Below are positions 13,971 through 62,319 of a stretch of 64,000 nt of DNA, piece by piece. The notes under the pieces were generated by a model. That model saw only the letters and a list, made by a program, of their open reading frames with translations, searched no databases and was not told the DNA's origin. The DNA is taken from the IMG/VR virus record IMGVR_UViG_3300026484_000007, positions 124,001 to 188,000 of that record, one strand, 5' to 3'. The position numbers and the translations under genes are program-made. Numbering within the stretch: the stretch's first letter is position 1; each line of letters opens with the position of its first letter.

Positions 13971-14104
13971 TGAAAACTCGTGATCCTAAAACGTTGCGCT
14001 TCATTGGATACACAAAGATATATACGAGTTCTAAAAATTTTAGAACTGCTTTTATATCGCTTGTATCTAAAAAAGATGCTACGTAGAAAATCAAGTTTTT
14101 CAAA
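13971..14104. repeat. ~130-bp imperfect palindrome, copy 1
   Basis: Centre GTTCTAAAA-A-TTTTAGAAC with complementary arms; other copies at 23947, 31661 and (half) 62256. Confidence 0.85.
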
Positions 14105-14168
14105 GTTTTTTCTATAGATTTTTAGATTTTTTCTAACGACAAAAAAAGTGATCCAAAGAGGATCATTT

Positions 14169-14378
14169 TTAAAAAGGAGATTGAGAAGATCCAACCGAAT
14201 CAATTTTATTATAATTCGATGAATCATTTGATTCAGTTGTATCTAAAGTAGACATAATTCCTACAAGCACCGTGATCGATATTAATAAAAATAAAAAGAT
14301 CACAATACCTTTTGTACTTTTTGTAGATTGCTCCCACATAGTTTTTAAATTTAAATTTTCAGTTTGATTCATTTTCAT
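14169..14378 (-). CDS. small membrane protein
   Basis: One TM segment. Confidence 0.6.
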   Translation of the reverse strand: MKMNQTENLNLKTMWEQSTKSTKGIVIFLFLLISITVLVGIMSTLDTTESNDSSNYNKIDSVGSSQSPF

Positions 14379-14607
14379 CTCCTTTTTTTTCTATATTTTT
14401 TCCTTTGATTTCATCATGAATTTTTTGTAATTTTTTAAATAAGATTAAACCGATTAAAAAGATAGATAAAATTATTATATCGTAAAAGCTTTCCATCTCA
14501 GTTCTTTCTGAAAATATTCCTCTGAATAAAAAGATTATAATTACTAAATTCAGGTATACTGATACAACTATATCTTCTGTGATTTTTATTTTTTTAAAAA
14601 AATTCAT
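14359..14607 (-). CDS. small membrane protein
   Basis: Two TM segments. Confidence 0.6.
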   Translation of the reverse strand: MNFFKKIKITEDIVVSVYLNLVIIIFLFRGIFSERTEMESFYDIIILSIFLIGLILFKKLQKIHDEIKGKNIEKKGDENESN

Positions 14608-14608
14608 T

Positions 14609-15400
14609 TTATTCTCCTTTATCTTCTATCTCTCCTGCAATATTTTCAAGAGAAGATGTAATTTCATTAAATTCTTTTTCAATTGCGTTCGTCGCTTCTT
14701 TGACTAATAATTCATTTAGGAATTTATCTTTATCGTTTTCTAAGAATGTTATAATATCCTTAGTATCCCTAATGAATTCATCTTTTTCCTTAAGAATAGT
14801 TACTTGAATATCGATTTCCTTTGATTGTTCTTTTGCTTTCGCTAATATTTTTTCAATATTACTTAAAGAATTTTCAAGTCTTGATTTTAAATTGTAATAC
14901 ATGTCTTTAAGCTTCGGTTCTTCCTCATTCGAAATTTTATCTTCATAACTTTTAATTTTACTTTGTGCTTTTTTTCTAAGTAACTTAATCTTTTCCATTT
15001 CATCTCTTAAAATTAATCTATAATTTTCAAGAGTCTCGATTTTTTTCTGTCTAGCTTCTTGAAGTAATTTCGTCATAGCGTGATTAGCAATTTTTCTTCT
15101 TATTACTGGATCATACGCTAAAATTGTTTTTATTCCATAAAAACTCAAAACTGAAAATACAGCGAGAACTGCTAAAGCAGTTACCCCTGAAATTATTTGA
15201 GCTGAATATGTTGCTGCTAGAAATAAACTACCTCCAGCTAAACCTAAAACGATTAACCATTTTTTTAAAGTTCCAGGTTTTGAAACTTCTTCGATCGCTT
15301 GTTGATACTTATTATCAATAGATGATAATGATGGAAGATTTGAAAGTGTGCTTTTGCTTTCCGCTAAAGTTGTTCCGTCGTCTGTTTCTATAATTGTCAT
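14609..15400 (-). CDS. membrane-anchored coiled-coil protein
   Basis: Two TM segments then a long coiled coil; SD-preceded ATG at 15400. Confidence 0.7.
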   Translation of the reverse strand: MTIIETDDGTTLAESKSTLSNLPSLSSIDNKYQQAIEEVSKPGTLKKWLIVLGLAGGSLFLAATYSAQIISGVTALAVLAVFSVLSFYGIKTILAYDPVIRRKIANHAMTKLLQEARQKKIETLENYRLILRDEMEKIKLLRKKAQSKIKSYEDKISNEEEPKLKDMYYNLKSRLENSLSNIEKILAKAKEQSKEIDIQVTILKEKDEFIRDTKDIITFLENDKDKFLNELLVKEATNAIEKEFNEITSSLENIAGEIEDKGE

Positions 15401-15493
15401 GATTTTCTCCTTTTTATTTATTTCTTTATTTATTTTTTTATCTATTAATTTTTCGCATTGAGCTTCAAATAAATCAGCCATGATTTATCTTTT

Positions 15494-19365: not shown

Positions 19366-19420
19366 CTCTTCTCCTTATTTTTTTAATTTATGAATTTTTT
19401 CTAACGACAAAAAAAGTGAT

Positions 19421-19834
19421 CTAAAAAAGATCACATTTTTTAATTTTTACAAAAACTCTTTGAAGTAATTCTTTTTCTTCTTGAGTTCTCATATGACTAT
19501 CTAACCACGGATAAAAATAAATTTTATCATAGTTTTCCGCAGCTGTTGTATGATAAAGTTTTCCATCTTCATCTTGTTGCACTAATACAAAGAAATCAAT
19601 TTTTGGACCAAAAGCTCCAACAAGATCTGAACTATCGATCTTTAAATGATCAAGATCAAATAATGTATAGTAAAGATCTTTCAATTGAGGACTTATGAAT
19701 AAATATTCATTAGTCCCTTTTTTTGGAAATTTTAAATCTAACTCCTTAATGATCTTTTTAAGATCATTAATATCATGTTGTAGATTTAATAATTTTTTAT
19801 TTTCATTTTCTTTCGCTTGACTTGTTTGACTCAT
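19421..19834 (-). CDS. hypothetical protein
   Basis: 137-aa ORF. Confidence 0.65.
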   Translation of the reverse strand: MSQTSQAKENENKKLLNLQHDINDLKKIIKELDLKFPKKGTNEYLFISPQLKDLYYTLFDLDHLKIDSSDLVGAFGPKIDFFVLVQQDEDGKLYHTTAAENYDKIYFYPWLDSHMRTQEEKELLQRVFVKIKKCDLF

Positions 19835-20843
19835 ATAATCCTCCTTGTTTTAAAAGATCTTCCATAGCTACTGCTAAAGATCTGATCTCTTTTTGCGCAG
19901 AACTTTTCGTTCTTAAATTTAAATAATTATCAATTCCATCTGGATACCAAGCGTTCCAAATTGTAGTATAAATACTAACTGGAAGAACATCTCTTGCTTC
20001 CTGCGTTGGTACTTTATCAGCAGTCAATGTTTGATAAAGCTTTATGTCGTCTTGAATTTTTTCAATAACCTTTTCATTATTTAATTTTTCGGTTAATCTA
20101 AATTCAATTGAAACTTTTTCTCCAGAAGTATATCTTCTAGATAATTCTTGCCACATTGATCTTCTATGTCTTTCATCTTGTCTAGCGTCTCTTATAGTTA
20201 TTTTTTTTCTAAATACAAAAAAGTTTTTCTTAATAAGATCTAATTCAGATTCATTATTATACCAAAAATCACTTTCGATATTTAATTTATCTTTTTCTAA
20301 AGTCAAAAATGCTACTCGATGTTCTTGATTAAATTTTTCAATAAAATTCAAATCATACATCAATGCTCTAAGATTCGTGATACTATTATTAAAATCAATA
20401 TTGTATCCATAGCGGATAGTATTTGGTATTAAATCCGTTTTTTCTTTATTAAAGAATATTGAAGCTTTCTTTTGAAATTCTTCAATATTTCCATCCACAT
20501 CTTGAATCATTTTATTAAAAATAACGTTTTTGATTTCGCTAAAGCATAATTCAATAAATTCTTTTTTTTCTTGATTTAAAAGAACTGGTACGAATTCAAA
20601 ACTTGAACTTGGAAGACCAATACTTTCTCTTGATAATTTATCAAATAATTTAAAGTTAGGTTTAAGACCTTCGTTTCCATAGCAAACGCTCGCTACTTTA
20701 CTCACTGCTTGAACTCTTTCTTCTTGCGAAAGATTCCCTCTTGAGAAATCCCAAAGTTCAACGAACCCTGGAGTTTCACTATTGTAATAACCTTCTTCTT
20801 CTAAAAAAAGATCTTTTTTAGATACTAATTGTATACTTTCCAT
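19803..20843 (-). CDS. thyX: FAD-dependent thymidylate synthase
   Basis: RHR...QELSRRY, ARDVLP, LRTKSSAQKEIR. Confidence 0.88.
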   Translation of the reverse strand: MESIQLVSKKDLFLEEEGYYNSETPGFVELWDFSRGNLSQEERVQAVSKVASVCYGNEGLKPNFKLFDKLSRESIGLPSSSFEFVPVLLNQEKKEFIELCFSEIKNVIFNKMIQDVDGNIEEFQKKASIFFNKEKTDLIPNTIRYGYNIDFNNSITNLRALMYDLNFIEKFNQEHRVAFLTLEKDKLNIESDFWYNNESELDLIKKNFFVFRKKITIRDARQDERHRRSMWQELSRRYTSGEKVSIEFRLTEKLNNEKVIEKIQDDIKLYQTLTADKVPTQEARDVLPVSIYTTIWNAWYPDGIDNYLNLRTKSSAQKEIRSLAVAMEDLLKQGGLYESNKSSERK

Positions 20844-23912: not shown

Positions 23913-23946
23913 TCTTTCTCCTTTTTACTTTTTAAATTTTTTTCTT

Positions 23947-24080
23947 TGAAAAACTGAGATCCTAAAACGTTGCGCTTCATTAGATACACAAAGATATATA
24001 GCAGTTCTAAAATTTTTAGAACTGCTTTTATATCGCTTGTATCTATTTTAGATGCTACATTGAAAATCAAAGTTTTCAAA
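23947..24080. repeat. ~130-bp imperfect palindrome, copy 2
   Basis: Near-identical to 13971-14104, with the same flanking motif and terminator. Confidence 0.85.
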
Positions 24081-24470
24081 AGTTTTTCTATGGATTTTTT
24101 CTAACGACAAAAAAAGTGATCCAAAGAGGATCAGTTTTTACATTTCCAGTTAATTTCGGAATTTAATTTTTTTAAAATTTTTTTAAATTTTTTAAATTTA
24201 ATTCCGTATTTTTTACAGATCTTTTTTAGATCTTTTTTAGATACATTTTTCATTTTTTCTCCTTTTTAAAATTTATTAAATTTATTAAAATTTATTATTT
24301 AGATTTACTTATATTGAATTCAAAATGCGGATTTGAAATGTAAAATATTTTATATTCCTTTTTTGGAAAAACATTTACCATTCGATAAATTCCAGAAATA
24401 TATCCTACGCCAAAACTTAAAATTATAATCAACGCAATTCTTATGACTAACTTTTGATTTTCATTTAGAT

Positions 24471-25950: not shown

Positions 25951-26484
25951 TTAAATTTTTAATCTTTTTTTATGAGTATATTGAGCATATTGAGTCCTCT
26001 GTTTATTTTCAAAACCATTATTAATATCAAAAATACTTTCGCAACTTTTAATATTAATCAATTTAAAATTATTTTTGCCTAATCGCCAACGGTATTCCAC
26101 CCCACAATAATCGGATACATCAAATTTTTTTATAGTCGAATTTGATTGTCCAGCTTCAGTTTGTAATAATTTACCAAGAACTGTTATAAAAGCTAAATTA
26201 TCCGACAAAATAATTTTTTCTTTAAATTCTGGATGAATAAATTTTAAAGTATAATGATGGATAAGATTATTTATCTCATCGTAGTTCGAAATTTTTTCAT
26301 TGAATAATAAATAGTATACTTCTTGATTTTTTAATAAAAATTTCATATTGGCGAATTCGCTAGTAAGATTAAATCGACTATCGTCTAAAAATATATACCG
26401 TGCTCGAAAAATTTTAGGATAATTTAATTTTAAATCTTTACAGGTTTTGATTATTAACATTCGAATTAATTTATTCTTTAACAT
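25951..26484 (-). CDS. tandem paralog 1 of 3, hypothetical
   Basis: Shares FLLKNQEVYY, HYTL, LGKLLQ and C-terminal KRLKI with its neighbours. Confidence 0.8.
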   Translation of the reverse strand: MLKNKLIRMLIIKTCKDLKLNYPKIFRARYIFLDDSRFNLTSEFANMKFLLKNQEVYYLLFNEKISNYDEINNLIHHYTLKFIHPEFKEKIILSDNLAFITVLGKLLQTEAGQSNSTIKKFDVSDYCGVEYRWRLGKNNFKLINIKSCESIFDINNGFENKQRTQYAQYTHKKRLKI

Positions 26485-26493
26485 TTTTCCTCC

Positions 26494-27033
26494 TTAGATT
26501 TTTAATCTTTTTCGGTAAACTTGCTTTAATTTACTTAAACGAGATTCATTTTTAAAAGCATCAATATTTTTTGCATCAAAAATATTTGGACCAAGTTTAA
26601 TATTATCTAAATAAAAATTATCTCTTCCTAACCACCAACGGTATTCGATGCTGCAATAATCATCCACGTCAAAATTTTTTATAATTGAATTTGATCGTCT
26701 AGCTTCCTTCTGTAGTAATCTACCAAGAGTAGTTATAAATAACGGACTATCCGATAAAATGATTCTTTCCTTAAAGTCTGGTTTAATGAATCTTAAAGTA
26801 TAATGATTAGCGAGATCATTGATCTTTTCAATATTAAAAATTTTTTTATTGAATAATATATAATATACTTCTTGATTTTTTAATAAAAAATCCATCGTGG
26901 AACGCTCGCCTATAAGATTAAATTGATAATCATCTACGAACTTATAATCTGCTTGAATAATTTTTGGATAGTTCGTTTTTAAATCTTCGCAAGCTTGAAT
27001 TACCAACCTTCGAATTGAGCTATTCTTTAGCAT
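26494..27033 (-). CDS. tandem paralog 2 of 3, hypothetical
   Basis: Same shared blocks as paralog 1. Confidence 0.8.
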   Translation of the reverse strand: MLKNSSIRRLVIQACEDLKTNYPKIIQADYKFVDDYQFNLIGERSTMDFLLKNQEVYYILFNKKIFNIEKINDLANHYTLRFIKPDFKERIILSDSPLFITTLGRLLQKEARRSNSIIKNFDVDDYCSIEYRWWLGRDNFYLDNIKLGPNIFDAKNIDAFKNESRLSKLKQVYRKRLKI

Positions 27034-27042
27034 ATCTCCTCC

Positions 27043-27591
27043 TTAAATTTTTAATCTTTTTTTATATACACGTCTCGAATTATTTGAGCCACTTAAATCA
27101 TACATATTTTTAAAAGTGTTGATATTATTATTAAGATTATCTGAACATGAAATAATATTATTTAATTTAAAATTTCCATTTCCTTTTAACCACCAAAAAT
27201 ATTCATTATACGAATTACAATGAACATCAAATTTTTTTATAATCGAATTTGATCGTCTGGCTTCAGTTTGCAATAATTTACCAAGAGCTGTTAGGAACTT
27301 AAAATTATTTGATAAAATAATTTTTTCATTGAAGTCTGGATAAATGAATCTTAAAGTATAATGATCTCTAAGATTATTTATCTCATTAAAATCTACGATA
27401 TTTTTATCGAATAATAAATAGTATACTTCTTGATTTTTTAATAAAAATTTCATATTAGCTCGAAGGTCGGTAAGATTAAATAAAGAATCATCTAAAAATA
27501 TATACTGTGCTCGAAAAATTTTAGGATAATTTAATTCTGAATCTTCGCAAGCTTCGGTTGCTAACATTTTAACTAAACTGTTATTTAACAT
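27043..27591 (-). CDS. tandem paralog 3 of 3, hypothetical
   Basis: Same shared blocks as paralog 1; SD-preceded ATG at 27591. Confidence 0.8.
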   Translation of the reverse strand: MLNNSLVKMLATEACEDSELNYPKIFRAQYIFLDDSLFNLTDLRANMKFLLKNQEVYYLLFDKNIVDFNEINNLRDHYTLRFIYPDFNEKIILSNNFKFLTALGKLLQTEARRSNSIIKKFDVHCNSYNEYFWWLKGNGNFKLNNIISCSDNLNNNINTFKNMYDLSGSNNSRRVYKKRLKI

Positions 27592-27631
27592 TTTTCCTCC
27601 TTTTATGATCATGATCTAAAAAAGATCACTT

Positions 27632-29888: not shown

Positions 29889-29905
29889 AGTCTTTTTCCT
29901 CCTGT

Positions 29906-31625: not shown

Positions 31626-31660
31626 AAATTCCTCCTTAAATTTTTAAATCTTTTTTTCTT

Positions 31661-31795
31661 TGAAAACTCGTGATCCTAAAACGTTAAGCAACGATAGATA
31701 TCTAAAGATATATAGCAGTTCTAAAAATTTTAGAACTGCTTTTATATCGCTTGTATCTAAAAAAGATGCTACGTGGAAAATCAAAGTTTTCAAAA
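31661..31795. repeat. ~130-bp imperfect palindrome, copy 3
   Basis: Near-identical to copies 1 and 2. Confidence 0.85.
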
Positions 31796-31876
31796 GTTTT
31801 TTCTGACGACAAAAAAAGAAGAGTATTTATATAGCGCCCTCTTCAACGGCGCTGGATATTCAATAAAAATAAAAGA

Positions 31877-32509: not shown

Positions 32510-32652
32510 TTTTCCTCCTTTAAATTTTTACAAGAAAAATTGTTTTTAAAATAAATTAAATAAGCACGTGAAATTGTTGCTCATCTATTAATAATATATC
32601 TATATTTTCTAACGATGTTCTAAAACCTTAAATTTTTTCTAACGACAAAAAA

Positions 32653-47539: not shown

Positions 47540-47645
47540 TCTTCCTCCTTAATTTTTTTTTGCTTAATTGATATCAATGAGGTTGTGGAAGAGTTCTAAA
47601 AATTTTAATGAAATAAAAAAAATTTTGATAAAAAGAAAGCTTGAG

Positions 47646-47930
47646 TCAAATGGCTCTTTCGAGCCATTTGACTGCCTTCTTCAAGGCTTTCACCTTGAAG
47701 TGAAGGTCGTCGACCTTCACTTTGAGCTCAAACTCTTCTGAGCTCAAAATATCCATATGCATGAGGAAGTCAACTTCCCCATGCATTTTAATATACTCGG
47801 CTTCAGCCGCTTCAAGAGCGGCTTCAGCAGCCTCAGTTTCCCTAAGAGCGGCTTTCGCCGCTCTTAGATTTTTTTTCTCTTCTTTAAGAGCGGCTTTCGC
47901 CGCTCTTAATAATTTTTCAATTTTTTCCAT
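47646..47930 (-). CDS. small helical early-type protein with an LRAAKAAL duplication
   Basis: Cassette promoter and SD. Confidence 0.7.
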   Translation of the reverse strand: MEKIEKLLRAAKAALKEEKKNLRAAKAALRETEAAEAALEAAEAEYIKMHGEVDFLMHMDILSSEEFELKVKVDDLHFKVKALKKAVKWLERAI

Positions 47931-48052
47931 TCTTCCTCCTTGAAATTTTTTTTTGCTATTAGATTATCAATGATACATAGATGTAATTCTAAAAAAAATT
48001 TTAAAAAAATTAAGAAAATTTAATAAATAAAAAATTAAGAAAAAAGCAACGG

Positions 48053-48247
48053 TTATTCCGGAGCGGGTAGCTCAACTACCTCAACTCCGTAACTAGGGTT
48101 GCTTTCTTCTTGGAGGGCGCGGACATATGCCTCCGCGTCCTCCTTTTCCCAGAATACTTTGGATACGGAACTGATTCCGTATCCAAAGTAACCATCTACG
48201 AAGTAGTACGCTACTCCGTAGATTTTTTTATTTTCTAAATTTTCCAT
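48053..48247 (-). CDS. small early-type protein
   Basis: Cassette promoter and SD. Confidence 0.7.
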   Translation of the reverse strand: MENLENKKIYGVAYYFVDGYFGYGISSVSKVFWEKEDAEAYVRALQEESNPSYGVEVVELPAPE

Positions 48248-48357
48248 ATCTCCTCCTTAATTTTTTTTGCTATTAGATTATCAATGATACATAGATGTAA
48301 TTCTAAAAAAAATTTTAAAAAAATTAAGAAATAAAAAGAGATTGGATGATCTGGAGT

Positions 48358-48561
48358 TTAAAACTCCAAGTCATCCAAATCATCTAATTCTAGCAGCTTC
48401 TCTAAAGCTGCTGCTTTTTCAGCAGCAGCTTTTGCTACTTTAGCCTCATACGAGGCCAAAATTGCGGCTTCTTTAGCCGCTTTTTTTGCTGCTGCAGCTT
48501 TTGCTGCAGCTGTTTCTGAGGCTCTTTGAGCCTCAGAAACTCTTTCAATTAGAAATTTCAT
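48358..48561 (-). CDS. Ala/Lys-rich microprotein with acidic tail
   Basis: SD-preceded ATG at 48561. Confidence 0.7.
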   Translation of the reverse strand: MKFLIERVSEAQRASETAAAKAAAAKKAAKEAAILASYEAKVAKAAAEKAAALEKLLELDDLDDLEF

Positions 48562-48681
48562 TCTTTCCTCCTTAAATTTTTTTTGCTTAATTGATATCAA
48601 TGATATAAAACGAAGTTTTAAAATAATTTACATGTACTTAAATATACTTAAATACTTAAAATTGCTCACAAAGGATATAAT

Positions 48682-49317
48682 ATGTTTTTTATAAATGAAA
48701 TGACGGAGAAAAAAATAAATAATATCGCTAATATTATTATCGAATTAAATACTCTTTTAGAAGAAGCGGCAGGGAAATACTCAATGCCTTTAACTGGAGT
48801 TCCAAAAGCAGGAAAAAGTTTAATATCAGGTGGTTTAGATCATGTTTATAAAAAAAGCAAAGATAAATATTTTATAGAGAAATTATCGCCGGATATGGAA
48901 GGAAAATGGACTTTTGATACCGGAAAGTTAGAATTAGCTAGAGAAATGAAAAATAAATTAAAAGACAAAAATGAGTTTTTTGATGATAGATTCGTAAAAA
49001 TAAAAAATACTCATATTCCTAATTTAATTAAAAATTTTGATAAAACTGTGTTTGATTTGGGAGGTATTCCTTCGAAAGAAAACGAGAGTTTTATCGATAA
49101 TATACAAAAAAGTTCAATTTTAAATGATAAAAAATTCGTACCAGTCGTTCTTTCTCCTGATAGACAGAAATCGTACGAATGGCAAAAGTTTTTCAATGAA
49201 AAATTCGAAACCGATCCTATAATTTATACTCCAAATTGGAATTTTAAAAAAGATATAAAACAACAATCGATATATCATGCTAATGAACTTCTTAACCGAA
49301 TCCAAAAAAGATTATAA
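48682..49317 (+). CDS. P-loop ATPase of the Csx3-associated (AAA-type) family
   Basis: GVPKAGKS Walker A, SPDMEGKW (cf. CPDGEGxW, from recall), VFDLGG Walker B; convergent with csx3. Confidence 0.7.
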   Translation: MFFINEMTEKKINNIANIIIELNTLLEEAAGKYSMPLTGVPKAGKSLISGGLDHVYKKSKDKYFIEKLSPDMEGKWTFDTGKLELAREMKNKLKDKNEFFDDRFVKIKNTHIPNLIKNFDKTVFDLGGIPSKENESFIDNIQKSSILNDKKFVPVVLSPDRQKSYEWQKFFNEKFETDPIIYTPNWNFKKDIKQQSIYHANELLNRIQKRL

Positions 49318-49338
49318 ATAAAAAAACATAATCCCTGC

Positions 49339-49635
49339 TTACACAGGGATTATATCTCCGACTTTTACGTCGGGTGTGTGGCTTTCAGCCACAATTCCCC
49401 CGCTTAGGCGAGGGTCGTAGCACGCCACGAATGGCGTGCAATGGTACTCATGTACCATCGCGGCAAAGAGCCATATCGGCCCTCTACCGCTTAAAATTAT
49501 ACCTACCCCAGGTTCAACCTGAGGCAATCTTTTAATTGCCTCAGGTAACTCCGCAGGGGTAATAACCCCACTTGTGAGCTCAAAGCTCACAAGTGCAATT
49601 TTATCGCTTACTTCTTTTACATCATATTTTATCAT
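49339..49635 (-). CDS. csx3: CRISPR ring nuclease Csx3/Crn3
   Basis: GVITPAEL, GIILSGRGPIWLFA..H.YH, YDPRL.GGIV..SH. Confidence 0.9.
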   Translation of the reverse strand: MIKYDVKEVSDKIALVSFELTSGVITPAELPEAIKRLPQVEPGVGIILSGRGPIWLFAAMVHEYHCTPFVACYDPRLSGGIVAESHTPDVKVGDIIPV

Positions 49636-49701
49636 CGTCTTTCTCCTTTTGATTTTTTTGCTATTAGATTATCAATGATATACAAATCAGTTCTAAAAAA
49701 A

Positions 49702-49842
49702 TCACCAGAAGTTTTTATTCTTGTACTTCTGGCGATTGTATTTCTTAGAGTTCTTTTGAACTCTAGTATGGGGCTTTAATCCGCCCCATGTCTGACGAGT
49801 TTTGATCTCGTCTTTTTTGATTTTAATTGAAAATTTTTTCAT
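49702..49842 (-). CDS. small basic peptide (46 aa)
   Basis: Manual translation MKKFSIKIKKDEIKTRQTWGGLKPHTRVQKNSKKYNRQKYKNKNFW; promoter and SD present. Confidence 0.7.
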   Translation of the reverse strand: MKKFSIKIKKDEIKTRQTWGGLKPHTRVQKNSKKYNRQKYKNKNFW

Positions 49843-49998
49843 AATTTCTCCTTTTGATTTTTTTTAATTTTTCTGATAAATATATATCAATGTCTAAAAA
49901 AATTATTATAAAAATAAAAACTTAACAACTCTAAGATGTGTTTTTTCCGCTTTTGCGTCTGAGTTTAGCACCTCTCAGTCCGTCAGCCTCTTGGCTTC

Positions 49999-50151
49999 TT
50001 ATTCAGAAGTCGCAAGAACAGCTGCTTCGAAAGCAGCCTCAAGAGGCATTTCAGCCTCTTGAACTGCCTGAAGCATCGCTGCTACAAGCGCTTCAGAAGG
50101 GGCATTAAGCCCCTTCGAAGCCAAGAAAGCTAAAATCGCTTTCTTGTCCAT
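49999..50151 (-). CDS. Ala-rich microprotein (50 aa)
   Basis: Manual translation MDKKAILAFLASKGLNAPSEALVAAMLQAVQEAEMPLEAAFEAAVLATSE; promoter and SD present. Confidence 0.7.
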   Translation of the reverse strand: MDKKAILAFLASKGLNAPSEALVAAMLQAVQEAEMPLEAAFEAAVLATSE

Positions 50152-50379
50152 TTTCCTCCTTTATAATTTTTTTGCTAATTAAATATCTAATAAAACTAAA
50201 GCAGTTCTAAAAATTCTTTAAAAATAAAAATGAAGGAGGGAGAGAGGAAAGAGAAAGAAAAGAGAGGGAAAATGTCGCTATATTTCTAATAAAACTTTTT
50301 AGTTCTAAAATCGATTTTAAAATAATTTAAAAATAATTTAAAAAATAAATTTTTTTGATAAATAAAAGTCTGGCGAGAG

Positions 50380-50697
50380 TTATAATAACTCCTTCCAAAC
50401 TTCGTGCAAATCGTTTGCTGCTTTATATAATTTTTTTTTCAATTTCTTTAATTTTTTGATTTTGCCTCTATTTACACGAAGCTCGTCCTCGAGCTTCGTT
50501 TTATGGCGGGAATACTCCGCCATTTCTTCCCCAGAGGCTCCTACCTCTGGGAAGTTTAATCTTTCATTCTGCAACCAGCAGAACTTGAGGTGCTCTCGCA
50601 CCTCTTTTAATTCTTTTAATTCGCATTTTACTTTCTCAGCCTCATATCTGAGGCTATTTTCATAATCGAATACTTCATTTTTTAAATCTTTTCTCAT
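50380..50697 (-). CDS. small coiled-coil early-type protein
   Basis: Cassette promoter and SD. Confidence 0.7.
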   Translation of the reverse strand: MRKDLKNEVFDYENSLRYEAEKVKCELKELKEVREHLKFCWLQNERLNFPEVGASGEEMAEYSRHKTKLEDELRVNRGKIKKLKKLKKKLYKAANDLHEVWKELL

Positions 50698-50772
50698 TTC
50701 TTTCTCCTTTGATTTTTTTTGCTAATTAAATATCTAATAAACCAAAAGCAGTTCTAAAAATTCTTTAAAAAT

Positions 50773-50908
50773 AAAAAAGATAGGAGGAGTCCGCATAAGC
50801 GAACTCCCGGACCTCAAAGGGTCACGTAGCTTTATGACACAGATATGGTTACTCGTTCCGAAGAACTTTCACCATATCGAAAGGTGCCATAAAGCTACCC
50901 TATCTACT
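50773..50908 (-). ncRNA. putative structured ncRNA 2 (~135 nt, multi-way junction, loop E, UUCG tetraloop)
   Basis: Closing stem AGAUAGG/CCUAUCU, 15-bp and 8-bp stems, GAAA/GAGUA internal loop, GUUC-UUCG-GAAC, two more hairpins, U-tract; own promoter. Confidence 0.8.
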
Positions 50909-50944
50909 ATTTATATATCTAATAAACGTTTACGAGTTCTAAAA
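50901..50944 (-). promoter_or_regulatory. phage promoter identical to 4679-4722
   Basis: 44-bp exact repeat. Confidence 0.75.
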
Positions 50945-51000
50945 TAATTTAAACCATTTTTTCTAACGACAAAAAAACGCGTGAGATCTTAAATAGATCA

Positions 51001-51546
51001 TCACGCGCGAATATCGATTAAGAACTTTTTTTCTTTGAGAGTATTTACTCTCATTTGAAGTTCCTTAATCGTTTTTGGATCTTCAAAAGATCCTTCTGTA
51101 ACTTCGCAAGAACTTGTCTCTAGACTTTCGATAATTTCTTCATCTAGGACCTTTCTTGTTTTTTTAGAAGAATCTTTTTTCGATTCTTTTTTTACTTTTT
51201 CAATTTTGAGAGATTCTTCTATATACAATCTCTCATAACCCTCAGCTAATCTGAGGGTTTCAATAGCAAGATCTTTGAAGTAAGCTGCTTTGCTTTTAGC
51301 AGCTCTCACTTCATTAATCTTTTCATGGCGCTCTTTTTTAAGCGCTTTTTTCAAAGATTTGATCTCCTCGTTACGTTTTTCAATAACGCTTTTTAGGAGA
51401 TCAATCTCCTTTTTTTGGTCCTCAATTTTTTTATCGCGGCTGAGGATCATTTCCGCTAACTCTTTTGGCGAATACTTTGTCGCCAGTTCAATAACGCGTT
51501 TGAACTTATCAAATACGTTATTGATTTTTTCCTCTAATTTTTTCAT
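51001..51546 (-). CDS. coiled-coil protein
   Basis: 181-aa ORF with promoter motif upstream. Confidence 0.7.
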   Translation of the reverse strand: MKKLEEKINNVFDKFKRVIELATKYSPKELAEMILSRDKKIEDQKKEIDLLKSVIEKRNEEIKSLKKALKKERHEKINEVRAAKSKAAYFKDLAIETLRLAEGYERLYIEESLKIEKVKKESKKDSSKKTRKVLDEEIIESLETSSCEVTEGSFEDPKTIKELQMRVNTLKEKKFLIDIRA

Positions 51547-51603
51547 TTTAAATCCTTTTTTAACTATTTTTGATATATAAATATCAATGTTAAAAAGGAT
51601 CTT

Positions 51604-52329: not shown

Positions 52330-52437
52330 AAAAATTCCTTTTTGATTTTTTATAATTATTTTCTTTTTTTCTAGTTTTTTTCTGACGACAAAAAAAGTGA
52401 TCTAAAAAAGATCACTTTTTATAATTTCTATAATTTT

Positions 52438-53546: not shown

Positions 53547-53547
53547 T

Positions 53548-55980: not shown

Positions 55981-56229
55981 TTATTCTCCTTCTCTTGTAT
56001 ATAATTTTTCAATGCATTTTGGGCATACACTCAATCCACTATTAGCCAATAAAGCTAAATCAGTTCTTGCTAAAGCAAATTGTTCTAATTGATTGCGAAA
56101 ATCCCTTTCAGGATTTTCTTCCATTTGACAAACGCGCTTTTCATTTAACCAAAAATGTATTATATCATCTGGATCTTTGATTAATGATGCGCTTTTATTG
56201 TATTCTCTTAAAACCATAATCATAATCAC
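55981..56229 (-). CDS. hypothetical protein
   Basis: 82-aa ORF ending in CxxC. Confidence 0.6.
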   Translation of the reverse strand: MIMIMVLREYNKSASLIKDPDDIIHFWLNEKRVCQMEENPERDFRNQLEQFALARTDLALLANSGLSVCPKCIEKLYTREGE

Positions 56230-56232
56230 TCC

Positions 56233-56330
56233 TTTATTTTATTTTATTTTATTTTATTTTACTTTACTTTATTTTATTTTATTTTATTTTATTTTATTTT
56301 ATTTTATTTTATTTTATTTTATTTTATTTT
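56233..56330. repeat. (TTTTA)n pentanucleotide microsatellite, about 19 units
   Basis: Seen directly; two CTTTA variant units. Confidence 0.9.
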
Positions 56331-56756
56331 GCATTTTTCAAAATCAGCTTTATACAATTCCGATTTATCTTGCGATTTATCTTTTAACCATTTTTCTCCA
56401 TCTTCTTTTTCCCCTTTAGCCCATCTTTCAGCTTGAGCTGGATCTTGTTTTCTTGAAGATATTTCTTTTACAGTCTCTTGTAATGTACATTTAGGATTAT
56501 ATCCAGCTTTTCTAATTTCTCCAATTGCAATAACTCTTAAATCAGTCAGCGCATCGATCATCTCATGAATATCATTGTTTTTTACTGCATCTTTGAATTC
56601 TTGCAATTCTTCTTCTAATTTTTCAATTGCTTTTTCAGGATTGAAAGTTAATCCATATCTTTCCTCATTTAATTTCACGATTTTATCAATTGGATCATTT
56701 GTAATAATATCTTCTAATATATTTAAACCTGCTTTAATTTCTTTTACTAATTTCAT
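56319..56756 (-). CDS. MazG-like / all-alpha NTP pyrophosphohydrolase
   Basis: LEEELQEF...EMIDALTDL. Confidence 0.75.
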   Translation of the reverse strand: MKLVKEIKAGLNILEDIITNDPIDKIVKLNEERYGLTFNPEKAIEKLEEELQEFKDAVKNNDIHEMIDALTDLRVIAIGEIRKAGYNPKCTLQETVKEISSRKQDPAQAERWAKGEKEDGEKWLKDKSQDKSELYKADFEKCKIK

Positions 56757-56833
56757 TTTATCTCCTTTTTCTAATGACAAAAAAATTAAATAGTAAAGCT
56801 TTAACTTAAGCTCTACTATTTATATCTGTTGAA

Positions 56834-57397: not shown

Positions 57398-57819
57398 TTT
57401 TCATCCTTTTTATAATGGGATTCCCCAAAAATTCTTACTAAAATATAAAATAAAATTTTTTGAAATTTACCTGCTCCTAAGACAGTCATCGCTTCTAAAA
57501 AAATTTTATCGCAAAGTTCCCGCGGTAGGTTTATTGAACAATCTTTACTATAAAGATAATCATGTATAACTGCGGCTTTACCATATTTTGGATCCATAGG
57601 TGGATATATATTCCAAAATATTCTCGGTATGCTCGCAAAATTGGTTTCAAATCCTTCCGGAACTATTATATATGTTCGTTCCGGTAATACATCAGTGTAA
57701 TAGCAAAATTCTTCGATTAATTTCCATTTTCCATTATCTTGATATTCTAACTGTAACGGGCTAGTGAACTTTGCCGGTTTCTTTGGTTTCATTGTTTTCA
57801 TTGTTTTCTTTATTTCCAT
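57394..57819 (-). CDS. DUF1353-family protein
   Basis: VPEGFETNFASIPR...AAVIHDYLY. Confidence 0.85.
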   Translation of the reverse strand: MEIKKTMKTMKPKKPAKFTSPLQLEYQDNGKWKLIEEFCYYTDVLPERTYIIVPEGFETNFASIPRIFWNIYPPMDPKYGKAAVIHDYLYSKDCSINLPRELCDKIFLEAMTVLGAGKFQKILFYILVRIFGESHYKKDEK

Positions 57820-58249
57820 TAGACATCTCCAAATCATAAATTTTTTTAAATTTGTTGATATTCGGAGGTCTTTTTAATTTTTCAAGAGATCTTCTAATTA
57901 AAGCAGTTACTTCAATTTCAGGAATTTTTAAAAGCTGAGAAATTTCTTTAACCGAATAAAAATACATAGAATAAGCTCGAAGATTTTTTTTCGCTTTAGC
58001 TATTCTATCTCTACGGATTTTATTAAAACTATTATTTAAAATTAAAATATCATCTTCTAGTCTTTCGATTATCCTTCTCAGCTCTCGAATTTCTCTATTC
58101 AAAACAGATCCCTCATTATAATCCAAGAAAAAATTCAAAAGTTTTTGACAGCGATCTTTTTCGGTTTTTAATAATTTTATAAGAAAGACTGGATTTTTTT
58201 CCAGTTTTTCTGATTGTTTTTCTAGTTTGATTTTTTCTAAAGAATCCAT
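57761..58249 (-). CDS. sigma70 region-4-like HTH protein
   Basis: YSVKEISQLLKIPEIEV..LIRRSLEKLK. Confidence 0.55.
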   Translation of the reverse strand: MDSLEKIKLEKQSEKLEKNPVFLIKLLKTEKDRCQKLLNFFLDYNEGSVLNREIRELRRIIERLEDDILILNNSFNKIRRDRIAKAKKNLRAYSMYFYSVKEISQLLKIPEIEVTALIRRSLEKLKRPPNINKFKKIYDLEMSNGNKENNENNETKETGKVH

Positions 58250-59580: not shown

Positions 59581-59726
59581 TATCCGGGCGAGATGTTATT
59601 GGTGCCTCGCCGGGATGCCAGTACTTTTTTTAGGTGGCGCTTGGTCAAACCACCTTTTAAAGATCTCGTTGGAGTTAACTCCAACGCGGTGCCAGATATA
59701 TTTTTAGTGCCTCTGGTCAGGCACTT
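59581..59726 (-). ncRNA. structured leader or ncRNA with two tandem H-type pseudoknot units
   Basis: Two copies of stem-UGACCA loop-stem-A tract-CUGGCA, each followed by a hairpin; promoter motif at about 59749-59767. Confidence 0.6.
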
Positions 59727-59780
59727 ATTCTCCTTTAATCTTTTCTCAATAATATAATTTCAATGATTAAAAAGGATCTT

Positions 59781-60812
59781 CTAAAGATCCTTTCTTTGAG
59801 CAATAAGATCAATAATTTTTGATATCGTAGCAATAAAATGAAAATTCTTCATCTTTACGATATCTATTTGATTATACATTTCTATTAAAATCGATTTCGT
59901 TCCGAAATCTATATATTCAGAATCTATTAATTTTTTATAAATAAAATCATAATTCAATAAAAGATCTTCTTTTAAAATTTTAAGAATGTATTCATAATAT
60001 TGACTAAAATGTGAATCACTTTTTGAATTTTTATTTATTTCATTAATTTTTGCTTTATCTAAATTATTTAAATAATTGAATAAATATTCCAAAGTTTGGA
60101 TTATGTATTCTTCATTTCCTGTAAGATTTAAAGCTTTATTTGGATCAAATATAAATTCCCCAGTTACGCTATTAACTTCAAGGTTACTGATTAATTCTCT
60201 TAGACCTCTAACTAAATTTAATTTTACGAATGATTTTAATAATTCTTCATCGTATTTTACATTTTCAGTTTCTAGAATTTTTTTAACTCTATTTAAAGTT
60301 TGGATCTCATCAAGATCCTTAAAATGTAATCTATAATTAAATCTAGTAATCAGTGCATTATCAAGCTTTTCTGGATTATTAGTCGTCGCAAGAAAAGCAG
60401 TGTTATGCTGATATTTTTCAAGTGGCCCATCTTTTAAAACTACTTGAGCTTGTTGACTTAATCTATCAATTTCTTCAATTATTACTAATTTTTGCTTTGA
60501 TTGTAAAGCTCTTGCTTGCAACCAACTTTGTAATTTATCAATATCTTCTACTTTTCTTCCAAGAATAAAAATATCATTTGGATGTTTGATAATTTTGGCT
60601 TGCATAATTTTATTTAAAGAAGTCTTTCCGAATCCTGCTGGACCGTAACTTAAAACATTTCCTTGTATGAATTCATTATTATAAAATTTTACAAAAATAT
60701 CCTTGATATACTCTGGATCTTTTCCCTCGCCATTTAACGTACTTGGAAAAATTAAATCGTCCGGAGTTCTTGGACGATGTTTTTCAAACCACGATTTATA
60801 AACTTCTGCCAT
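59781..60812 (-). CDS. clamp loader (RFC small subunit / gp44-like AAA+)
   Basis: WFEKHRP, GPAGFGKTS, IIEEIDRL, ALITRF. Confidence 0.9.
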   Translation of the reverse strand: MAEVYKSWFEKHRPRTPDDLIFPSTLNGEGKDPEYIKDIFVKFYNNEFIQGNVLSYGPAGFGKTSLNKIMQAKIIKHPNDIFILGRKVEDIDKLQSWLQARALQSKQKLVIIEEIDRLSQQAQVVLKDGPLEKYQHNTAFLATTNNPEKLDNALITRFNYRLHFKDLDEIQTLNRVKKILETENVKYDEELLKSFVKLNLVRGLRELISNLEVNSVTGEFIFDPNKALNLTGNEEYIIQTLEYLFNYLNNLDKAKINEINKNSKSDSHFSQYYEYILKILKEDLLLNYDFIYKKLIDSEYIDFGTKSILIEMYNQIDIVKMKNFHFIATISKIIDLIAQRKDL

Positions 60813-60907
60813 TTTTTAATCCTTTATTTTTTTATCTGCTAGCAATTATATCTTTTGATTCTTATTTATAACACTTATATTTATGCTGCTTATGCAGCTT
60901 GCAACGT

Positions 60908-62227
60908 TTACAGCACACTTAAATCTATGCCATTTAATTCTGCTGCGCAAGTAAAAGTATACTCGGTCGAATTTTTTTTAGATAACATTTGATTCACAAA
61001 GATTATATCACATGCGAATATGTATAATTTTGGATGAATTTGAACTTTAGCTTTTTTATCTTTCGCTAGTTGCTCAGTACTTTCTTGAAAATCTAAGATT
61101 TTATTTATATCTATATCCGAATAAATATTAAAGTTATCCAAATATAATCTTTTATAAAAATAATTAAGATTCGATAATCTTGCATAACTATTTCTAAGTA
61201 TCTTAATTTTATCATTATCAATAGGTACATTTACGAATATAGATGTTCCGCTTTTTCCTTCGAAAAATTTATCAGTATGAACGCCTGGATCGTTATCTCC
61301 ATATTTTAAAAATTTATAAGTACCTGGACTAAGTTTTCTTTCTTCCGCAGCATTTATCGTTGTTTTGATATACGTGCTTCCAGCTTTTTGCTGATATTCA
61401 GCAATGTTAAAATACGATTTACCTGGAATCAATGGCATTACTTTTGAATTAATACCTAACCCAAAACCAGTCAATAATATATTAAAATATTTTGATGTAA
61501 GAGTAGGATTTCCCTGGAACTTATCTCCACCAGAATCAAAAATTGAATTTAATGATTCGAAAATTACTTTAAACCCTGGAGGAGAATCACTAAAAACTAA
61601 CTCTCCAGAAAAATCGTCGAAATAAAGAATTGTTTCATCTAACACAGGAATATATGTATCTAAATAATAATTTAATAATTCTTTATCGGTAAATGTCTCT
61701 GGAAGACTAACATTGTTTACATTAATATTATGCTGAAGACTTTTATTTATATGAGAATCTAGTTTATAATTTCCATAATAAACTTTTATATTATTTAATA
61801 AAACTTCAGTAAAAAATTGATAACTGGTAAAATTTTGATTATATATTGCTTTCTTATGTAAAATATTTTCATACGTTAGACGTCGTAAAACTGCGCTAAC
61901 GCCTATAATTGATACATTAAAAATACCTGTTTCTTCGTCTCTTGATATAAATTGTATCTTTTCTGGATACAAATAAAAACTAAGACTGTCGGTGTTATTA
62001 TTTATTTTTATATTTAAATAAGCTTTTTTTGCTTGTAATAAATATAAATCAAATTCGGTAATTCCTATTTCGATCTGATAAAGATTCATTCTGTCTTTAC
62101 TAAAAAGATTTTTAGAAATTCTAAAAGAATGCACGAAATAAGAATTATTTGCATTAACCACGACATCCGGAGCTGGAACCATTTGCGCGGTAATGTTATA
62201 ATTTTTATTTACTATTTTTTTTGACAT
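60908..62227 (-). CDS. hypothetical protein (possibly structural)
   Basis: SD-preceded ATG at 62227; beta-rich. Confidence 0.6.
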   Translation of the reverse strand: MSKKIVNKNYNITAQMVPAPDVVVNANNSYFVHSFRISKNLFSKDRMNLYQIEIGITEFDLYLLQAKKAYLNIKINNNTDSLSFYLYPEKIQFISRDEETGIFNVSIIGVSAVLRRLTYENILHKKAIYNQNFTSYQFFTEVLLNNIKVYYGNYKLDSHINKSLQHNINVNNVSLPETFTDKELLNYYLDTYIPVLDETILYFDDFSGELVFSDSPPGFKVIFESLNSIFDSGGDKFQGNPTLTSKYFNILLTGFGLGINSKVMPLIPGKSYFNIAEYQQKAGSTYIKTTINAAEERKLSPGTYKFLKYGDNDPGVHTDKFFEGKSGTSIFVNVPIDNDKIKILRNSYARLSNLNYFYKRLYLDNFNIYSDIDINKILDFQESTEQLAKDKKAKVQIHPKLYIFACDIIFVNQMLSKKNSTEYTFTCAAELNGIDLSVL

Positions 62228-62255
62228 TTTATCTCCTTTTATTTTTTTAACCGCA

Positions 62256-62319
62256 AAAAAACTTGATTTTCTATGTAGCATCTTTTTTAGATACTAAGGA
62301 TATATACGAGTTCTAAAAT
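62256..62319. repeat. half copy (one arm, inverted) of the ~130-bp palindrome
   Basis: ACTTGATTTTCTATGTAGCATCTTTTTTAGATAC is the reverse complement (one mismatch) of the right arm of copy 1. Confidence 0.75.

What the first reader, a model, noticed from the sequence alone, without database searches (positions are those of the whole stretch)
13971..62319. Dispersed ~130-bp imperfect palindrome (3.5 copies) centred on back-to-back TTTTAGAAC
Seen at 13971-14104, 23947-24080 and 31661-31795, plus one inverted arm at 62256-62319. The two ~65-bp arms are diverged reverse complements and meet at GTTCTAAAA-W-TTTTAGAAC, the same 9-mer found upstream in the phage promoters. Every copy is intergenic, between a GTCGTTAG-type motif and the next SD. 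Inference: a divergent promoter pair that could make antisense RNA, an RNase III-type processing hairpin, a cruciform origin, or a MITE-like element.
Basis: partly seen in the sequence, partly recalled or inferred. Interest (0 to 1): 0.65.

Follow-up and report, generated by a model that had tools for sequence, protein, structure and literature searches.

The report
Back-to-back promoter-like repeats, jumbo phage
A ~140-bp imperfect palindrome, repeated 22 times between the genes of an uncultivated 273-kb jumbo phage, is most likely two phage promoter-like modules set back to back, part of a repeated regulatory cassette that sometimes accompanies inserted orphan genes; no transcript data were available to prove it.

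Summary
The window is bases 124001-188000 of a 272.6-kb, 27% GC phage record that encodes two split multisubunit RNA polymerases. Genome-wide there are 22 full copies and 9 half copies, all intergenic.

Each arm, read outward from the centre, begins TTTTAGAACT. The same 9-mer heads a second set of promoter-like units that sit 60-62 nt before start codons.

Evidence against a selected hairpin:
- The two arms (A and B) are 68% complementary and fold well, but show no compensatory changes.
- Pairing within a copy is no better than between copies.
- A and B arms vary independently of each other.
- The spacing between the two 9-mers varies by 0 to 19 bp.
- Orientation relative to the genes is mixed.

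Evidence against a MITE: no target-site duplication and no transposase found.

In relatives with 51-72% protein identity the element is absent. At two loci it marks the edge of inserted orphan genes.

Best reading (confidence about 0.5): a divergent pair of phage-specific promoter-plus-leader modules inside a recombining terminator/promoter cassette. This resembles T4-type PeSLs in role but not in sequence. Transcription start sites are inferred, not shown.

The parts
13965..14110 (.). Full palindromic element, copy 1. A arm about 13972-14036, centre GTTCTAAAAATTTTAGAAC at 14028-14046, B arm 14038-14104. Read on the coding (minus) strand the order is B', centre, A'.
   Evidence: RNA fold -38 to -39 kcal/mol, z -5 to -5.6
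23942..24086 (.). Full palindromic element, copy 2, centre at 24004-24022.
   Evidence: fold -44.6 kcal/mol, z -7.1
31655..31799 (.). Full palindromic element, copy 3, centre at 31718-31736. It is 98.5% identical to the copy at genome 250093.
62249..62322 (-). Lone B arm (half copy). It points with the genes: TTTTAGAAC on the minus strand at 62310-62318, 90 nt before the ATG of the 439-aa gene.
14126..14165 (-). Terminator cassette upstream of copy 1: hairpin, T7, GTCGTTAG, A6. It belongs to a 37-member family that always follows, and is co-oriented with, the upstream gene.
24096..24133 (-). Terminator cassette upstream of copy 2. The hairpin at 24117-24133 scores as terminator-like on both strands.
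31797..31855 (-). Terminator cassette (GTCGTCAG variant) upstream of copy 3.
62331..62371 (-). Terminator cassette (GTCGTCAG variant) upstream of the half copy.
13999..13999 (-). Inferred start point of the gene-directed A' arm of copy 1. It is the G at position 38 from the first T of TTTTAGAAC, a position shared by both arm types and the class-1 units. It would give an 82-nt leader to the ATG at 13917.
   Evidence: inference from the alignment of units; not measured
14075..14075 (+). Inferred start point of the upstream-facing B arm of copy 1. A transcript from here would run antisense into the terminator cassette at 14126-14165.
   Evidence: inference; not measured
47560..50945 (-). Cluster of class-1 promoter-like units of the form TTTTAGAAC, 14-15 nt, then a box close to TAGATATWTAAWTAGCA (members vary). 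TTTAGAAC starts on the minus strand at 47600, 49697, 50211, 50309, 50758 and 50943. Four of them lie 60-62 nt before the ATG of small genes.
   Evidence: (families D2, D3, D11)
4680..4722 (-). Class-1 unit followed by about 300 nt of hairpin-rich sequence with no ORF.
32583..32625 (-). Class-1-like unit directly after a GTCGTTAG cassette.

Best explanation
The element is two promoter-like modules placed back to back, so that their upstream TTTTAGAAC boxes abut or overlap at the centre and each module faces outward. Each module would hold a phage-specific promoter: TTTTAGAACT, about 15 nt, a TATC core, then a conserved AG about 6 nt further on as the likely start. A conserved leader of about 30 nt follows. 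The promoter would most likely be read by one of the phage's own two multisubunit RNA polymerases or a phage factor, not by host sigma-70. One module points at the downstream gene. The other points back at the bidirectional terminator of the upstream gene, where it could make at most a short antisense RNA. Together with the hairpin-T7-GTCGTTAG-A6 motif, the element forms a repeated terminator/promoter cassette that separates transcription units. Copies exchange sequence by recombination, which gives mosaic arms. Cassettes sit at the edges of lineage-specific orphan-gene insertions, as PeSL cassettes do in T4-type phages. Every full copy is A+B, never A+A or B+B. I explain this by inference only: a perfect 130-bp palindrome would be unstable. 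Shown here: anatomy, copy number, intergenic placement, arm independence, and absence from relatives. Inferred: promoter activity, start points, which polymerase acts, and any antisense output.
For: 1) Both arms read outward begin TTTTAGAACT(G/C)(C/G). The same word heads 14-16 class-1 units, five of which lie exactly 60-62 nt before start codons of small genes.
2) A lone B arm at genome 4701 sits 62 nt before an ATG, with the Shine-Dalgarno site directly after the conserved core. The outer third of the arm is therefore dispensable there.
3) The 9-mer is about 30 times denser in intergenic DNA than in coding DNA.
4) All 31 copies are intergenic. Fifteen of 22 full copies and 6 half copies directly follow a terminator cassette.
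5) A full copy plus a half copy occupy the main divergent gene junction at 188.2-188.4 kb, which is also the cumulative GC-skew minimum.
6) Two hybrids pair a class-1 unit with a B arm back to back (genome 53580/53595 and 94771/94773). Back-to-back pairing is therefore a property of the units, not of one repeat.
7) The arms behave as separate modules. There are no compensatory pairs. Within-copy pairing equals cross-copy pairing. The Mantel correlation between A and B distances is r = -0.01. The centre spacing varies by 0, +2, +7, +11 or +19 bp.
8) The phage has two sets of RNA polymerase beta/beta' genes. Jumbo phages of that kind use long, AT-rich, highly conserved promoters with a start about 6 nt after the motif (PMC5312081).
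9) Sigma-70-type matches in the element are no more frequent than in shuffled sequence.
10) Relatives place the 670-aa gene directly next to the 392/395-aa gene. This phage has the palindrome plus a 544-aa orphan gene between them. The same pattern occurs at genome 7133.
Against: A weight matrix built from the class-1 downstream box scores only the TTAGATATCT-type A' arms (about 6) above the 99th percentile of random intergenic sites; most arms score near background. The shared promoter features are therefore the 9-12-mer and a TATC core, not the whole motif. Conservation runs about 30 nt past the inferred start, which is more than a promoter needs. One arm of almost every copy points away from any gene. 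The strict A+B pairing is explained only by inference. The class-1 units themselves are not experimentally validated promoters. Gene calls came from my own ORF heuristic.
Confidence: 0.5

Rival explanations
1. RNA processing or stability hairpin. Read-through or upstream-initiated transcripts fold the two arms into a long imperfect hairpin, which a double-strand-specific RNase (host RNase III) cuts. This would separate or stabilise neighbouring messages, as at the intergenic RNase III sites of phage T7.
For: Every full copy tested folds into one long interrupted hairpin of -38 to -45 kcal/mol, z -5 to -7 against shuffles. All copies lie between genes of one transcription direction.
Against: The consensus fold keeps only 14 invariant central pairs, with no compensatory change. 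The GCAG/CGAG dimorphism of the two arms assorts independently: 13 of 22 copies match against 12 expected (read). Within-copy pairing is no better than cross-copy pairing (p = 0.64). Insertions of 2-19 nt occur at the tip. Orientation relative to transcription is mixed, 11 versus 10. Half copies exist. The phage encodes no RNase III.
Confidence: 0.13
2. Protein-binding array on DNA. The element is a symmetric landing pad for a phage DNA-binding protein, acting as operator, enhancer or silencer, or as a replication or organisation site. It would be comparable to the dispersed imperfect-palindrome homologous regions (hrs) of baculoviruses, which serve as enhancers and origins.
For: Twelve copies carry a perfect 19-bp palindrome at the centre. 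TAGAA-type boxes recur in the terminator cassette, the CTATAGAAAA spacer, the centre and the leaders. Blocks are conserved between the old A and B arm types (ACGT, ATCA, AGTTTTCAAAG). Two small helix-turn-helix proteins are encoded in the window. The baculovirus analogy comes from PMC4746121.
Against: Half-site spacing is not fixed (0 to +19 bp), which a dimeric binder would not tolerate. Single half-sites are common. No binder has been identified; the helix-turn-helix matches are below the curated cut-offs. Twenty-two sites is many for origins.
Confidence: 0.17
3. Selfish non-autonomous mobile element (MITE-like, or REP/BIME-like) that has spread through intergenic DNA and carries no function for the phage.
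For: Copies are 81-98% alike and dispersed, lie in both orientations and are confined to intergenic DNA. The element is absent from every relative and every other contig searched. The ends are inverted repeats, CTTTGAAAAC and GTTTTCAAAG.
Against: There are no target-site duplications or constant flanks. The phage has no Y1 transposase or TnpB. A and B arms have unlinked histories, so the element does not move as a unit. The placement is highly regular, after a terminator cassette and before a Shine-Dalgarno site. Arms share their first 12 nt with units at fixed distance from genes.
Confidence: 0.1

Closest known systems
PeSL (promoter-early stem-loop) regulatory cassettes of T4-type phages (PMC2839356, PMC4122927)
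   Same: Both are dozens of repeated composite terminator/promoter cassettes in intergenic DNA. Both lie preferentially in front of genes of unknown function and at the borders of insertions or replacements relative to other phages. Both are substrates for recombination between copies.
   Different: PeSLs are short, carry a host sigma-70 consensus promoter and are unidirectional. Here the repeat is a 140-bp two-armed palindrome with a phage-specific 9-mer and no above-chance sigma-70 match. Recombination is inferred from mosaic arms only. The relatives available are distant (51-72% protein identity), so no indel event is caught in the act.
Early (virion RNA polymerase) promoters of phiKZ/AR9-type jumbo phages (PMC5312081, PMC8244752)
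   Same: The phage has two split multisubunit RNA polymerases. The motifs are long, AT-rich, highly conserved and present in tens of copies. A conserved purine lies about 6 nt after the core.
   Different: The motif sequence is unrelated to the AR9 motif AAATATATATTAT-(6N)-G. Term searches of those two papers for 'bidirectional', 'divergent' and 'palindrom' returned no hits, so no back-to-back arrangement is mentioned there. Which polymerase, if any, reads these units is unknown.
SPO1 late promoters, CGTTAGA(N17-19)GATATT, read by gp33/gp34 with host core polymerase (consensus as quoted in PMC3601020)
   Same: Class-1 units read TTTTAGA-N18-GATATW, matching TTAGA and GATAT at the same spacing. 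The terminator cassette contains CGTTAGA exactly.
   Different: No sigma region 2 was found in the phage. Most palindrome arms lack the GATAT box. The resemblance is a lead, not a membership.
Baculovirus homologous regions (hrs) (PMC4746121)
   Same: Both are dispersed intergenic imperfect palindromes in a large double-stranded DNA virus genome. [quoted passage not shown]
   Different: Hrs are tandem arrays of about 30-bp palindromes bound by a known transactivator in an insect virus. Here the units are mostly single and 140 bp long, in a phage, with no known binder.
T7 intergenic RNase III sites
   Same: Both are repeated, imperfect intergenic hairpins between genes transcribed in one direction.
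   Different: T7 sites have a fixed orientation and a structure conserved as structure. Here orientation is mixed and there is no covariation.

Membership tests
Divergent (bidirectional) promoter pair | Two promoter-type units on opposite strands, facing outward, with adjacent upstream elements | tested here: met
   The two TTTTAGAAC 9-mers face outward back to back. They overlap in 12 copies and are up to 19 bp further apart in 10 copies.
Divergent (bidirectional) promoter pair | Each unit matches a promoter motif used elsewhere in the genome at fixed distance from genes | tested here: inconclusive
   The first 12 nt and a TATC core are shared with class-1 units that lie 60-62 nt before an ATG. 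A lone B arm sits at 62 nt. The weight matrix of the class-1 downstream box is matched only by about 6 A' arms.
Divergent (bidirectional) promoter pair | Primary transcript 5' ends on both strands | not testable with these tools
PeSL-type mobile regulatory cassette | Repeated intergenic composite of terminator stem-loop and promoter | tested here: met
   The hairpin-T7-GTCGTTAG-A6 motif lies next to 15 of 22 full copies and 6 half copies.
PeSL-type mobile regulatory cassette | Host sigma-70 consensus promoter | tested here: not met
   Sigma-70-like hits number 3-5 per 700 nt against 4.8-5.3 in shuffles. No hit falls on the outward units.
PeSL-type mobile regulatory cassette | Located at borders of gene insertions or replacements between related phages | tested here: inconclusive
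   Met at two loci (genome 122.5 kb and 7.1 kb). Not met at the portal locus, where no gene is gained. The relatives are distant and 73% of genes lack a homologue in the one complete relative.
MITE or other transposon-derived repeat | Target-site duplication flanking terminal inverted repeats | tested here: not met
   The flanks of all 22 copies show no direct repeat.
MITE or other transposon-derived repeat | Cognate transposase in the genome | tested here: not met
   No Y1 transposase or TnpB domain was found. Other transposase families were not searched.
RNase III-type processing hairpin | Stable long hairpin in the transcript | tested here: met
   -38 to -45 kcal/mol, z -5 to -7.
RNase III-type processing hairpin | Base pairing maintained by compensatory change, with fixed orientation to transcription | tested here: not met
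   Zero compensatory pairs. Permutation p = 0.64. Both orientations occur.
SPO1 gp34-type late promoter | CGTTAGA(N17-19)GATATT together with a gp34-like sigma factor | tested here: inconclusive
   Class-1 units read TTTTAGA-N18-GATATW. Sigma70 region 2 is absent. Only sub-threshold region-4-like helix-turn-helix matches were found.
Rfam RNA families | Match to any curated covariance model | tested here: not met
   No hit in the window or in the other genome stretches searched (genome 120-124 kb was not searched), apart from six tRNAs at 17.8-18.4 kb.

The most novel reading that the evidence does not exclude
The palindromes may be a previously undescribed kind of regulatory unit in jumbo phages. 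In this reading they are bidirectional promoters read by a phage multisubunit RNA polymerase, whose upstream-facing arm exists to fire a short antisense RNA of about 100 nt into the preceding gene's terminator and GTCGTTAG motif. That RNA would insulate or time neighbouring transcription units. The whole cassette would double as the recombination handle by which the phage gains orphan genes.
Probability: 0.15. Interest if true: 0.7.

Novelty: new variant of a known kind. Interest (0 to 1): 0.42.

Why it matters
Promoters of jumbo-phage multisubunit RNA polymerases are known for only a few cultured phages. This uncultivated phage offers a clean, highly repeated candidate set: about 70 TTTTAGAAC units plus 37 GTCGTTAG cassettes. 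These could be tested directly with reconstituted polymerase. If the back-to-back arrangement is functional, it would be a built-in source of antisense transcription and a modular cassette for gene gain in a giant phage. If not, the element is still a useful marker of recombination-driven genome plasticity. The finding is descriptive until 5' ends are mapped.

Tried and rejected
- **Exact centre in IMG/VR:** 3 chance hits in unrelated contigs of 30-54% GC.
- **20-mer of the A arm plus centre in JGI metagenome contigs:** only the phage's own contig carries the element. Nine other contigs match about 28 nt by chance.
- **Arm leaders in GTDB genomes, to test a CRISPR-repeat mimic or host origin:** 0 hits for one pattern and 4 single hits for the other, where about 4 are expected by chance. 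Rejected.
- **Relatives by RNA polymerase beta':** single-protein search of viral contigs found none. Alignment-based search found 8. None carries the element, and TTTTAGAAC is not enriched in the five examined. The closest relatives (64-72%) lack it in the 5-21 kb available. The whole record behind L012 could not be searched.
- **Rfam:** nothing but tRNAs.
- **Small ORFs across the element:** rejected, because centre indels of 2-19 bp and mixed orientation break any reading frame.
- **A' versus B as markers of different gene classes:** downstream genes are mostly unknown and show no split.
- **Better -10-like box in gene-directed arms:** not seen. The TTAGATATCT type occurs in 3 of 11 gene-directed and 7 of 11 upstream-facing A' arms (read).
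- **Inward-facing sigma-70-like site in the B arm (TTGAAA-16-TAGCAT):** no more frequent than in shuffles and absent from the A arm.
- **Central stem as an intrinsic terminator:** flagged in one copy, but 10 copies carry insertions in the loop.

The large protein-representative search, structure prediction and complex prediction were not needed.


Full report
**What the window is.**
The window is bases 124001-188000 of a single 272,602-bp virus record, estimated 97% complete and 27.2% GC. In the JGI collection the contig is Ga0256837_1000001. All genes in the window lie on the minus strand. By my own ORF heuristic the genome has three strand blocks: plus to 77.5 kb, minus to 188.2 kb, then plus. 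The phage encodes a RecJ-like nuclease, helicases, a DNA ligase, NAMPT and a split RNA polymerase beta'. Domain searches find two separate sets of beta and beta' genes, at 117-127 kb and at 217-231 kb. It is therefore a jumbo phage of the kind that carries its own multisubunit RNA polymerases, like phiKZ and AR9 (PMC5312081, PMC7598289). No phage record in GenBank is near it at the DNA level.

A profile built from 12 copies recovers 22 full copies (E 1e-29 to 1e-45) and 9 half copies in the genome. Three full copies and one half copy lie in the window. Every copy is intergenic. The alignment of the 22 full copies (A2) shows two arm types. The A arm (left) and the B arm (right) are each conserved among copies, with mean pairwise differences of 19% and 16%. 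They are only 63-74% complementary to each other. All 22 full copies are A+B. Eight half copies are B alone and one is A alone.

**Anatomy read outward from the centre.**
- Both arms begin TTTTAGAACT(G/C)(C/G), followed by an AT-rich stretch.
- A TATC core lies near position 28-31, and an invariant AG at position 37-38.
- About 30 nt of further conserved sequence follows, ending AGTTTT(T)CAAA(A)G.
- The 9-mer is strongly intergenic: 60 occurrences in 31.7 kb of intergenic DNA against 15 in 241 kb of coding DNA.

The same 9-mer heads a second family that I call class 1. Class-1 units read TTTTAGAAC, 14-15 nt, then a box close to TAGATATWTAAWTAGCA, with members varying. Five class-1 units lie exactly 60-62 nt before the ATG of small genes; four of these are in window 47.6-50.8 kb. 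Others precede hairpin-rich stretches without ORFs.

A lone B arm at genome 4701 also lies 62 nt before an ATG, with the Shine-Dalgarno site directly after the conserved core. Two hybrids pair a class-1 unit and a B arm back to back (genome 53580/53595 and 94771/94773). One full copy plus a half copy fill the main divergent gene junction at 188.2-188.4 kb. That junction is also the cumulative GC-skew minimum.

**Is the hairpin what is selected?**
Each full copy tested can fold into one long interrupted hairpin of -38 to -45 kcal/mol, z -5 to -7. Several results argue that this pairing is not under selection:
- The consensus fold keeps only 14 invariant central pairs, with no compensatory change.
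- The one dimorphism present on both arms (GCAG/CGAG against CTGC/CTCG) assorts independently: 13 of 22 copies match against 12 expected (read).
- Pairing an A arm with its own B arm is no more stable than pairing it with the B arm of another copy (permutation p = 0.64).
- Distances among A arms and among B arms are uncorrelated (Mantel r = -0.01, p = 0.51). For example, two copies share identical A arms while their B arms differ by 15%.
- The distance between the two 9-mers is not fixed. They overlap in 12 copies and are +2, +2, +7, +11 (six copies) and +19 bp apart in the rest.
- Orientation relative to the genes is mixed. B faces the downstream gene in about 11 copies and A' in about 10.

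Together these results say the arms are separate modules that recombine among copies. The pairing potential follows from their common origin and head-to-head layout.

**Surroundings.**
A second motif, a hairpin followed by T7-GTCGTTAG-A6, occurs 37 times. It always lies directly after a gene and is co-oriented with it. Fifteen full copies and six half copies lie immediately downstream of it, often via a CTATAGAAAA spacer. One arm of nearly every copy therefore points back into this cassette. In copy 2 the hairpin scores as terminator-like on both strands. A transcript from that arm would be about 100 nt long and antisense to the upstream gene's 3' end. In copy 3, however, no T-run follows the hairpin in the reverse direction. 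Where two elements are tandem, or a half copy precedes a full one (four places), a conserved linker joins them.

**Relatives.**
The exact centre, a 20-mer of the A arm, and both leaders were sought in IMG/VR, in JGI metagenome contigs and in GTDB genomes. Only the phage's own contig carries the element.

Relatives were found through RNA polymerase beta' at 45-72% protein identity. None has the element, and in five relatives at 45-61% identity TTTTAGAAC is not enriched. A 64% relative has two single units of the form TTTTAGAA(C/G), 13 nt, CATAGAAATTATA, in large intergenic regions. The 9-mer box is therefore probably older than the palindrome.

Synteny is informative at three loci:
- **Genome 122.5 kb.** In the 72%, 64% and 51% relatives a 658-670-aa gene is followed directly by a 392-395-aa gene. 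The 72% relative even keeps the homologous terminator and a TTTTGTCAATTA motif running straight into the Shine-Dalgarno site. In this phage the palindrome and a 544-aa orphan gene lie between them.
- **Genome 7.1 kb.** The palindrome and three orphan genes separate two genes that are adjacent in the 51% relative.
- **The portal gene.** The relative has no intergenic region at all. This phage has a terminator cassette and two tandem palindromes, with no gene gained.

**What it most likely is.**
The best-supported reading is a back-to-back pair of phage-specific promoter-plus-leader modules inside a repeated terminator/promoter cassette. Points in favour:
- the shared 12-nt head and fixed-distance placement;
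- the half copy used alone in front of a gene;
- the copy at the divergent junction;
- the class-1/B-arm hybrids;
- the modular behaviour of the arms;
- the presence of two phage polymerases, whose known promoters in AR9 and phiKZ are long, AT-rich, highly conserved and start about 6 nt after the motif (PMC5312081, PMC8244752).

Host-type sigma-70 matches are at chance level.

There is also a resemblance to the SPO1 late consensus CGTTAGA(N17-19)GATATT (quoted in PMC3601020). Class-1 units read TTTTAGA-N18-GATATW, and the terminator cassette contains CGTTAGA. This is only a lead. No sigma region 2 is encoded, and the two small helix-turn-helix proteins match region 4 only below threshold.

**Weak points.**
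- There are no transcript data.
- A weight matrix of the class-1 downstream box is matched by only about six A' arms; the rest score near background.
- Conservation extends well past the inferred start.
- One arm usually faces no gene.
- I explain the strict A+B composition by the instability of long perfect palindromes. That is inference only.

**Rivals.**
An RNA-processing hairpin (0.13), a DNA landing pad for a phage protein in the manner of baculovirus hrs (0.17; PMC4746121) and a selfish MITE-like repeat (0.10) remain possible. The evidence for and against each is listed in the Rival explanations section. No target-site duplications, Y1 transposase, TnpB or phage RNase III were found.

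**Comparison with what is known.**
In role and genomic behaviour the closest system is the PeSL cassette of T4-type phages. PeSLs are repeated intergenic promoter/terminator units in front of orphan genes that mediate modular shuffling (PMC2839356, PMC4122927). The element fails the PeSL defining feature of a sigma-70 consensus promoter. It also differs in being a 140-bp two-armed palindrome. I therefore rate it a new variant of a known kind, not a member of that family.

**Verdict.**
Function remains inferred. Interest is moderate (0.42): the element gives a clean candidate promoter set and an unusual bidirectional architecture in an uncultivated jumbo phage, but without experimental anchoring.

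**Compliance with the operators' notes.**
No alternative genetic code was invoked. The large protein search was not used.

Noticed in passing
window 2704-2755, 14126-14165, 19384-19440, 24096-24133, 31797-31855, 32602-32653, 35377-35430, 36415-36466, 52365-52418, 56734-56785, 62331-62371 (minus strand): A hairpin followed by T7-GTCGTTAG-A6 occurs 37 times genome-wide, always directly after a gene and co-oriented with it. In several places the Shine-Dalgarno site follows within 25-45 nt. It could be a terminator extension or a second promoter class, for the other phage polymerase. The 72% relative keeps a weaker form, TTTTGTCAATTA.
   Followed up: partly
window 4680-4722 and 50900-50945 (minus strand); genome 53.3-53.6 kb and 215.5-216.6 kb (L032, L038): Class-1 promoter-like units are followed by 100-300 nt of GC-richer, hairpin-rich sequence without ORFs. 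Some are near-identical to each other (genome 215746 and 216596; 128721 and 174943). These are candidate small RNAs. They have no Rfam match and are not tRNAs.
   Followed up: partly
window 42800-51600: A run of very small genes, each with its own class-1-type upstream unit (repeat families D2, D3, D11). It looks like an early, host-takeover-type gene cluster.
   Followed up: partly
window 13924-13970, 24150-24200, 29895-29950, 56223-56345: Short phased A/T-tract tandem repeats (periods 9, 9, 9 and 5) lie in the leaders between cassettes and Shine-Dalgarno sites.
   Followed up: no
window 25951-27612: Three tandem paralogous genes (177-189 aa) give 550-bp direct repeats at 69-83% identity (families D1, D12).
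   Followed up: no
genome 120810-122627 (L036:810-2627): A 544-aa orphan gene with a palindrome at its 5' side is inserted between two genes that are adjacent in three relatives. It ends in only a weak AT hairpin and has no GTCGTTAG cassette.
   Followed up: yes
genome 21930-21937, 42347-42355, 188368-188375, 250229-250247: Where elements are tandem, or a half copy precedes a full one, the junction is a conserved linker: GTTTTC, then (G/A)ATATAATTTT, then a few bases, then TGAAAAC. It contains a near-consensus TATAAT.
   Followed up: partly
window 34938-35312 and 57761-58249 (minus strand): Two small proteins (124 and 162 aa) have helix-turn-helix matches to sigma-70 region 4 at or below the curated cut-off. 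They are candidate binders of the repeated boxes.
   Followed up: partly
window 1471-2715 (minus strand); genome 117-127 kb and 217-231 kb: Two separate sets of split RNA polymerase beta/beta' genes. The beta' N-terminal piece has more than 100 metagenomic relatives, several on contigs of 200-290 kb.
   Followed up: partly
genome 17865-18390 (L030): A cluster of six tRNA genes by Rfam. ARAGORN calls five: Arg, Ser, Asn, Thr and Gln.
   Followed up: no
window 10870-10885, 20810-20825, 24229-24244 (minus strand): The B-arm core word GTATCTAAAAAAGAT recurs with one mismatch inside GATC-stem hairpins, away from any palindrome (9 matches in the window against 0.25 expected).
   Followed up: no
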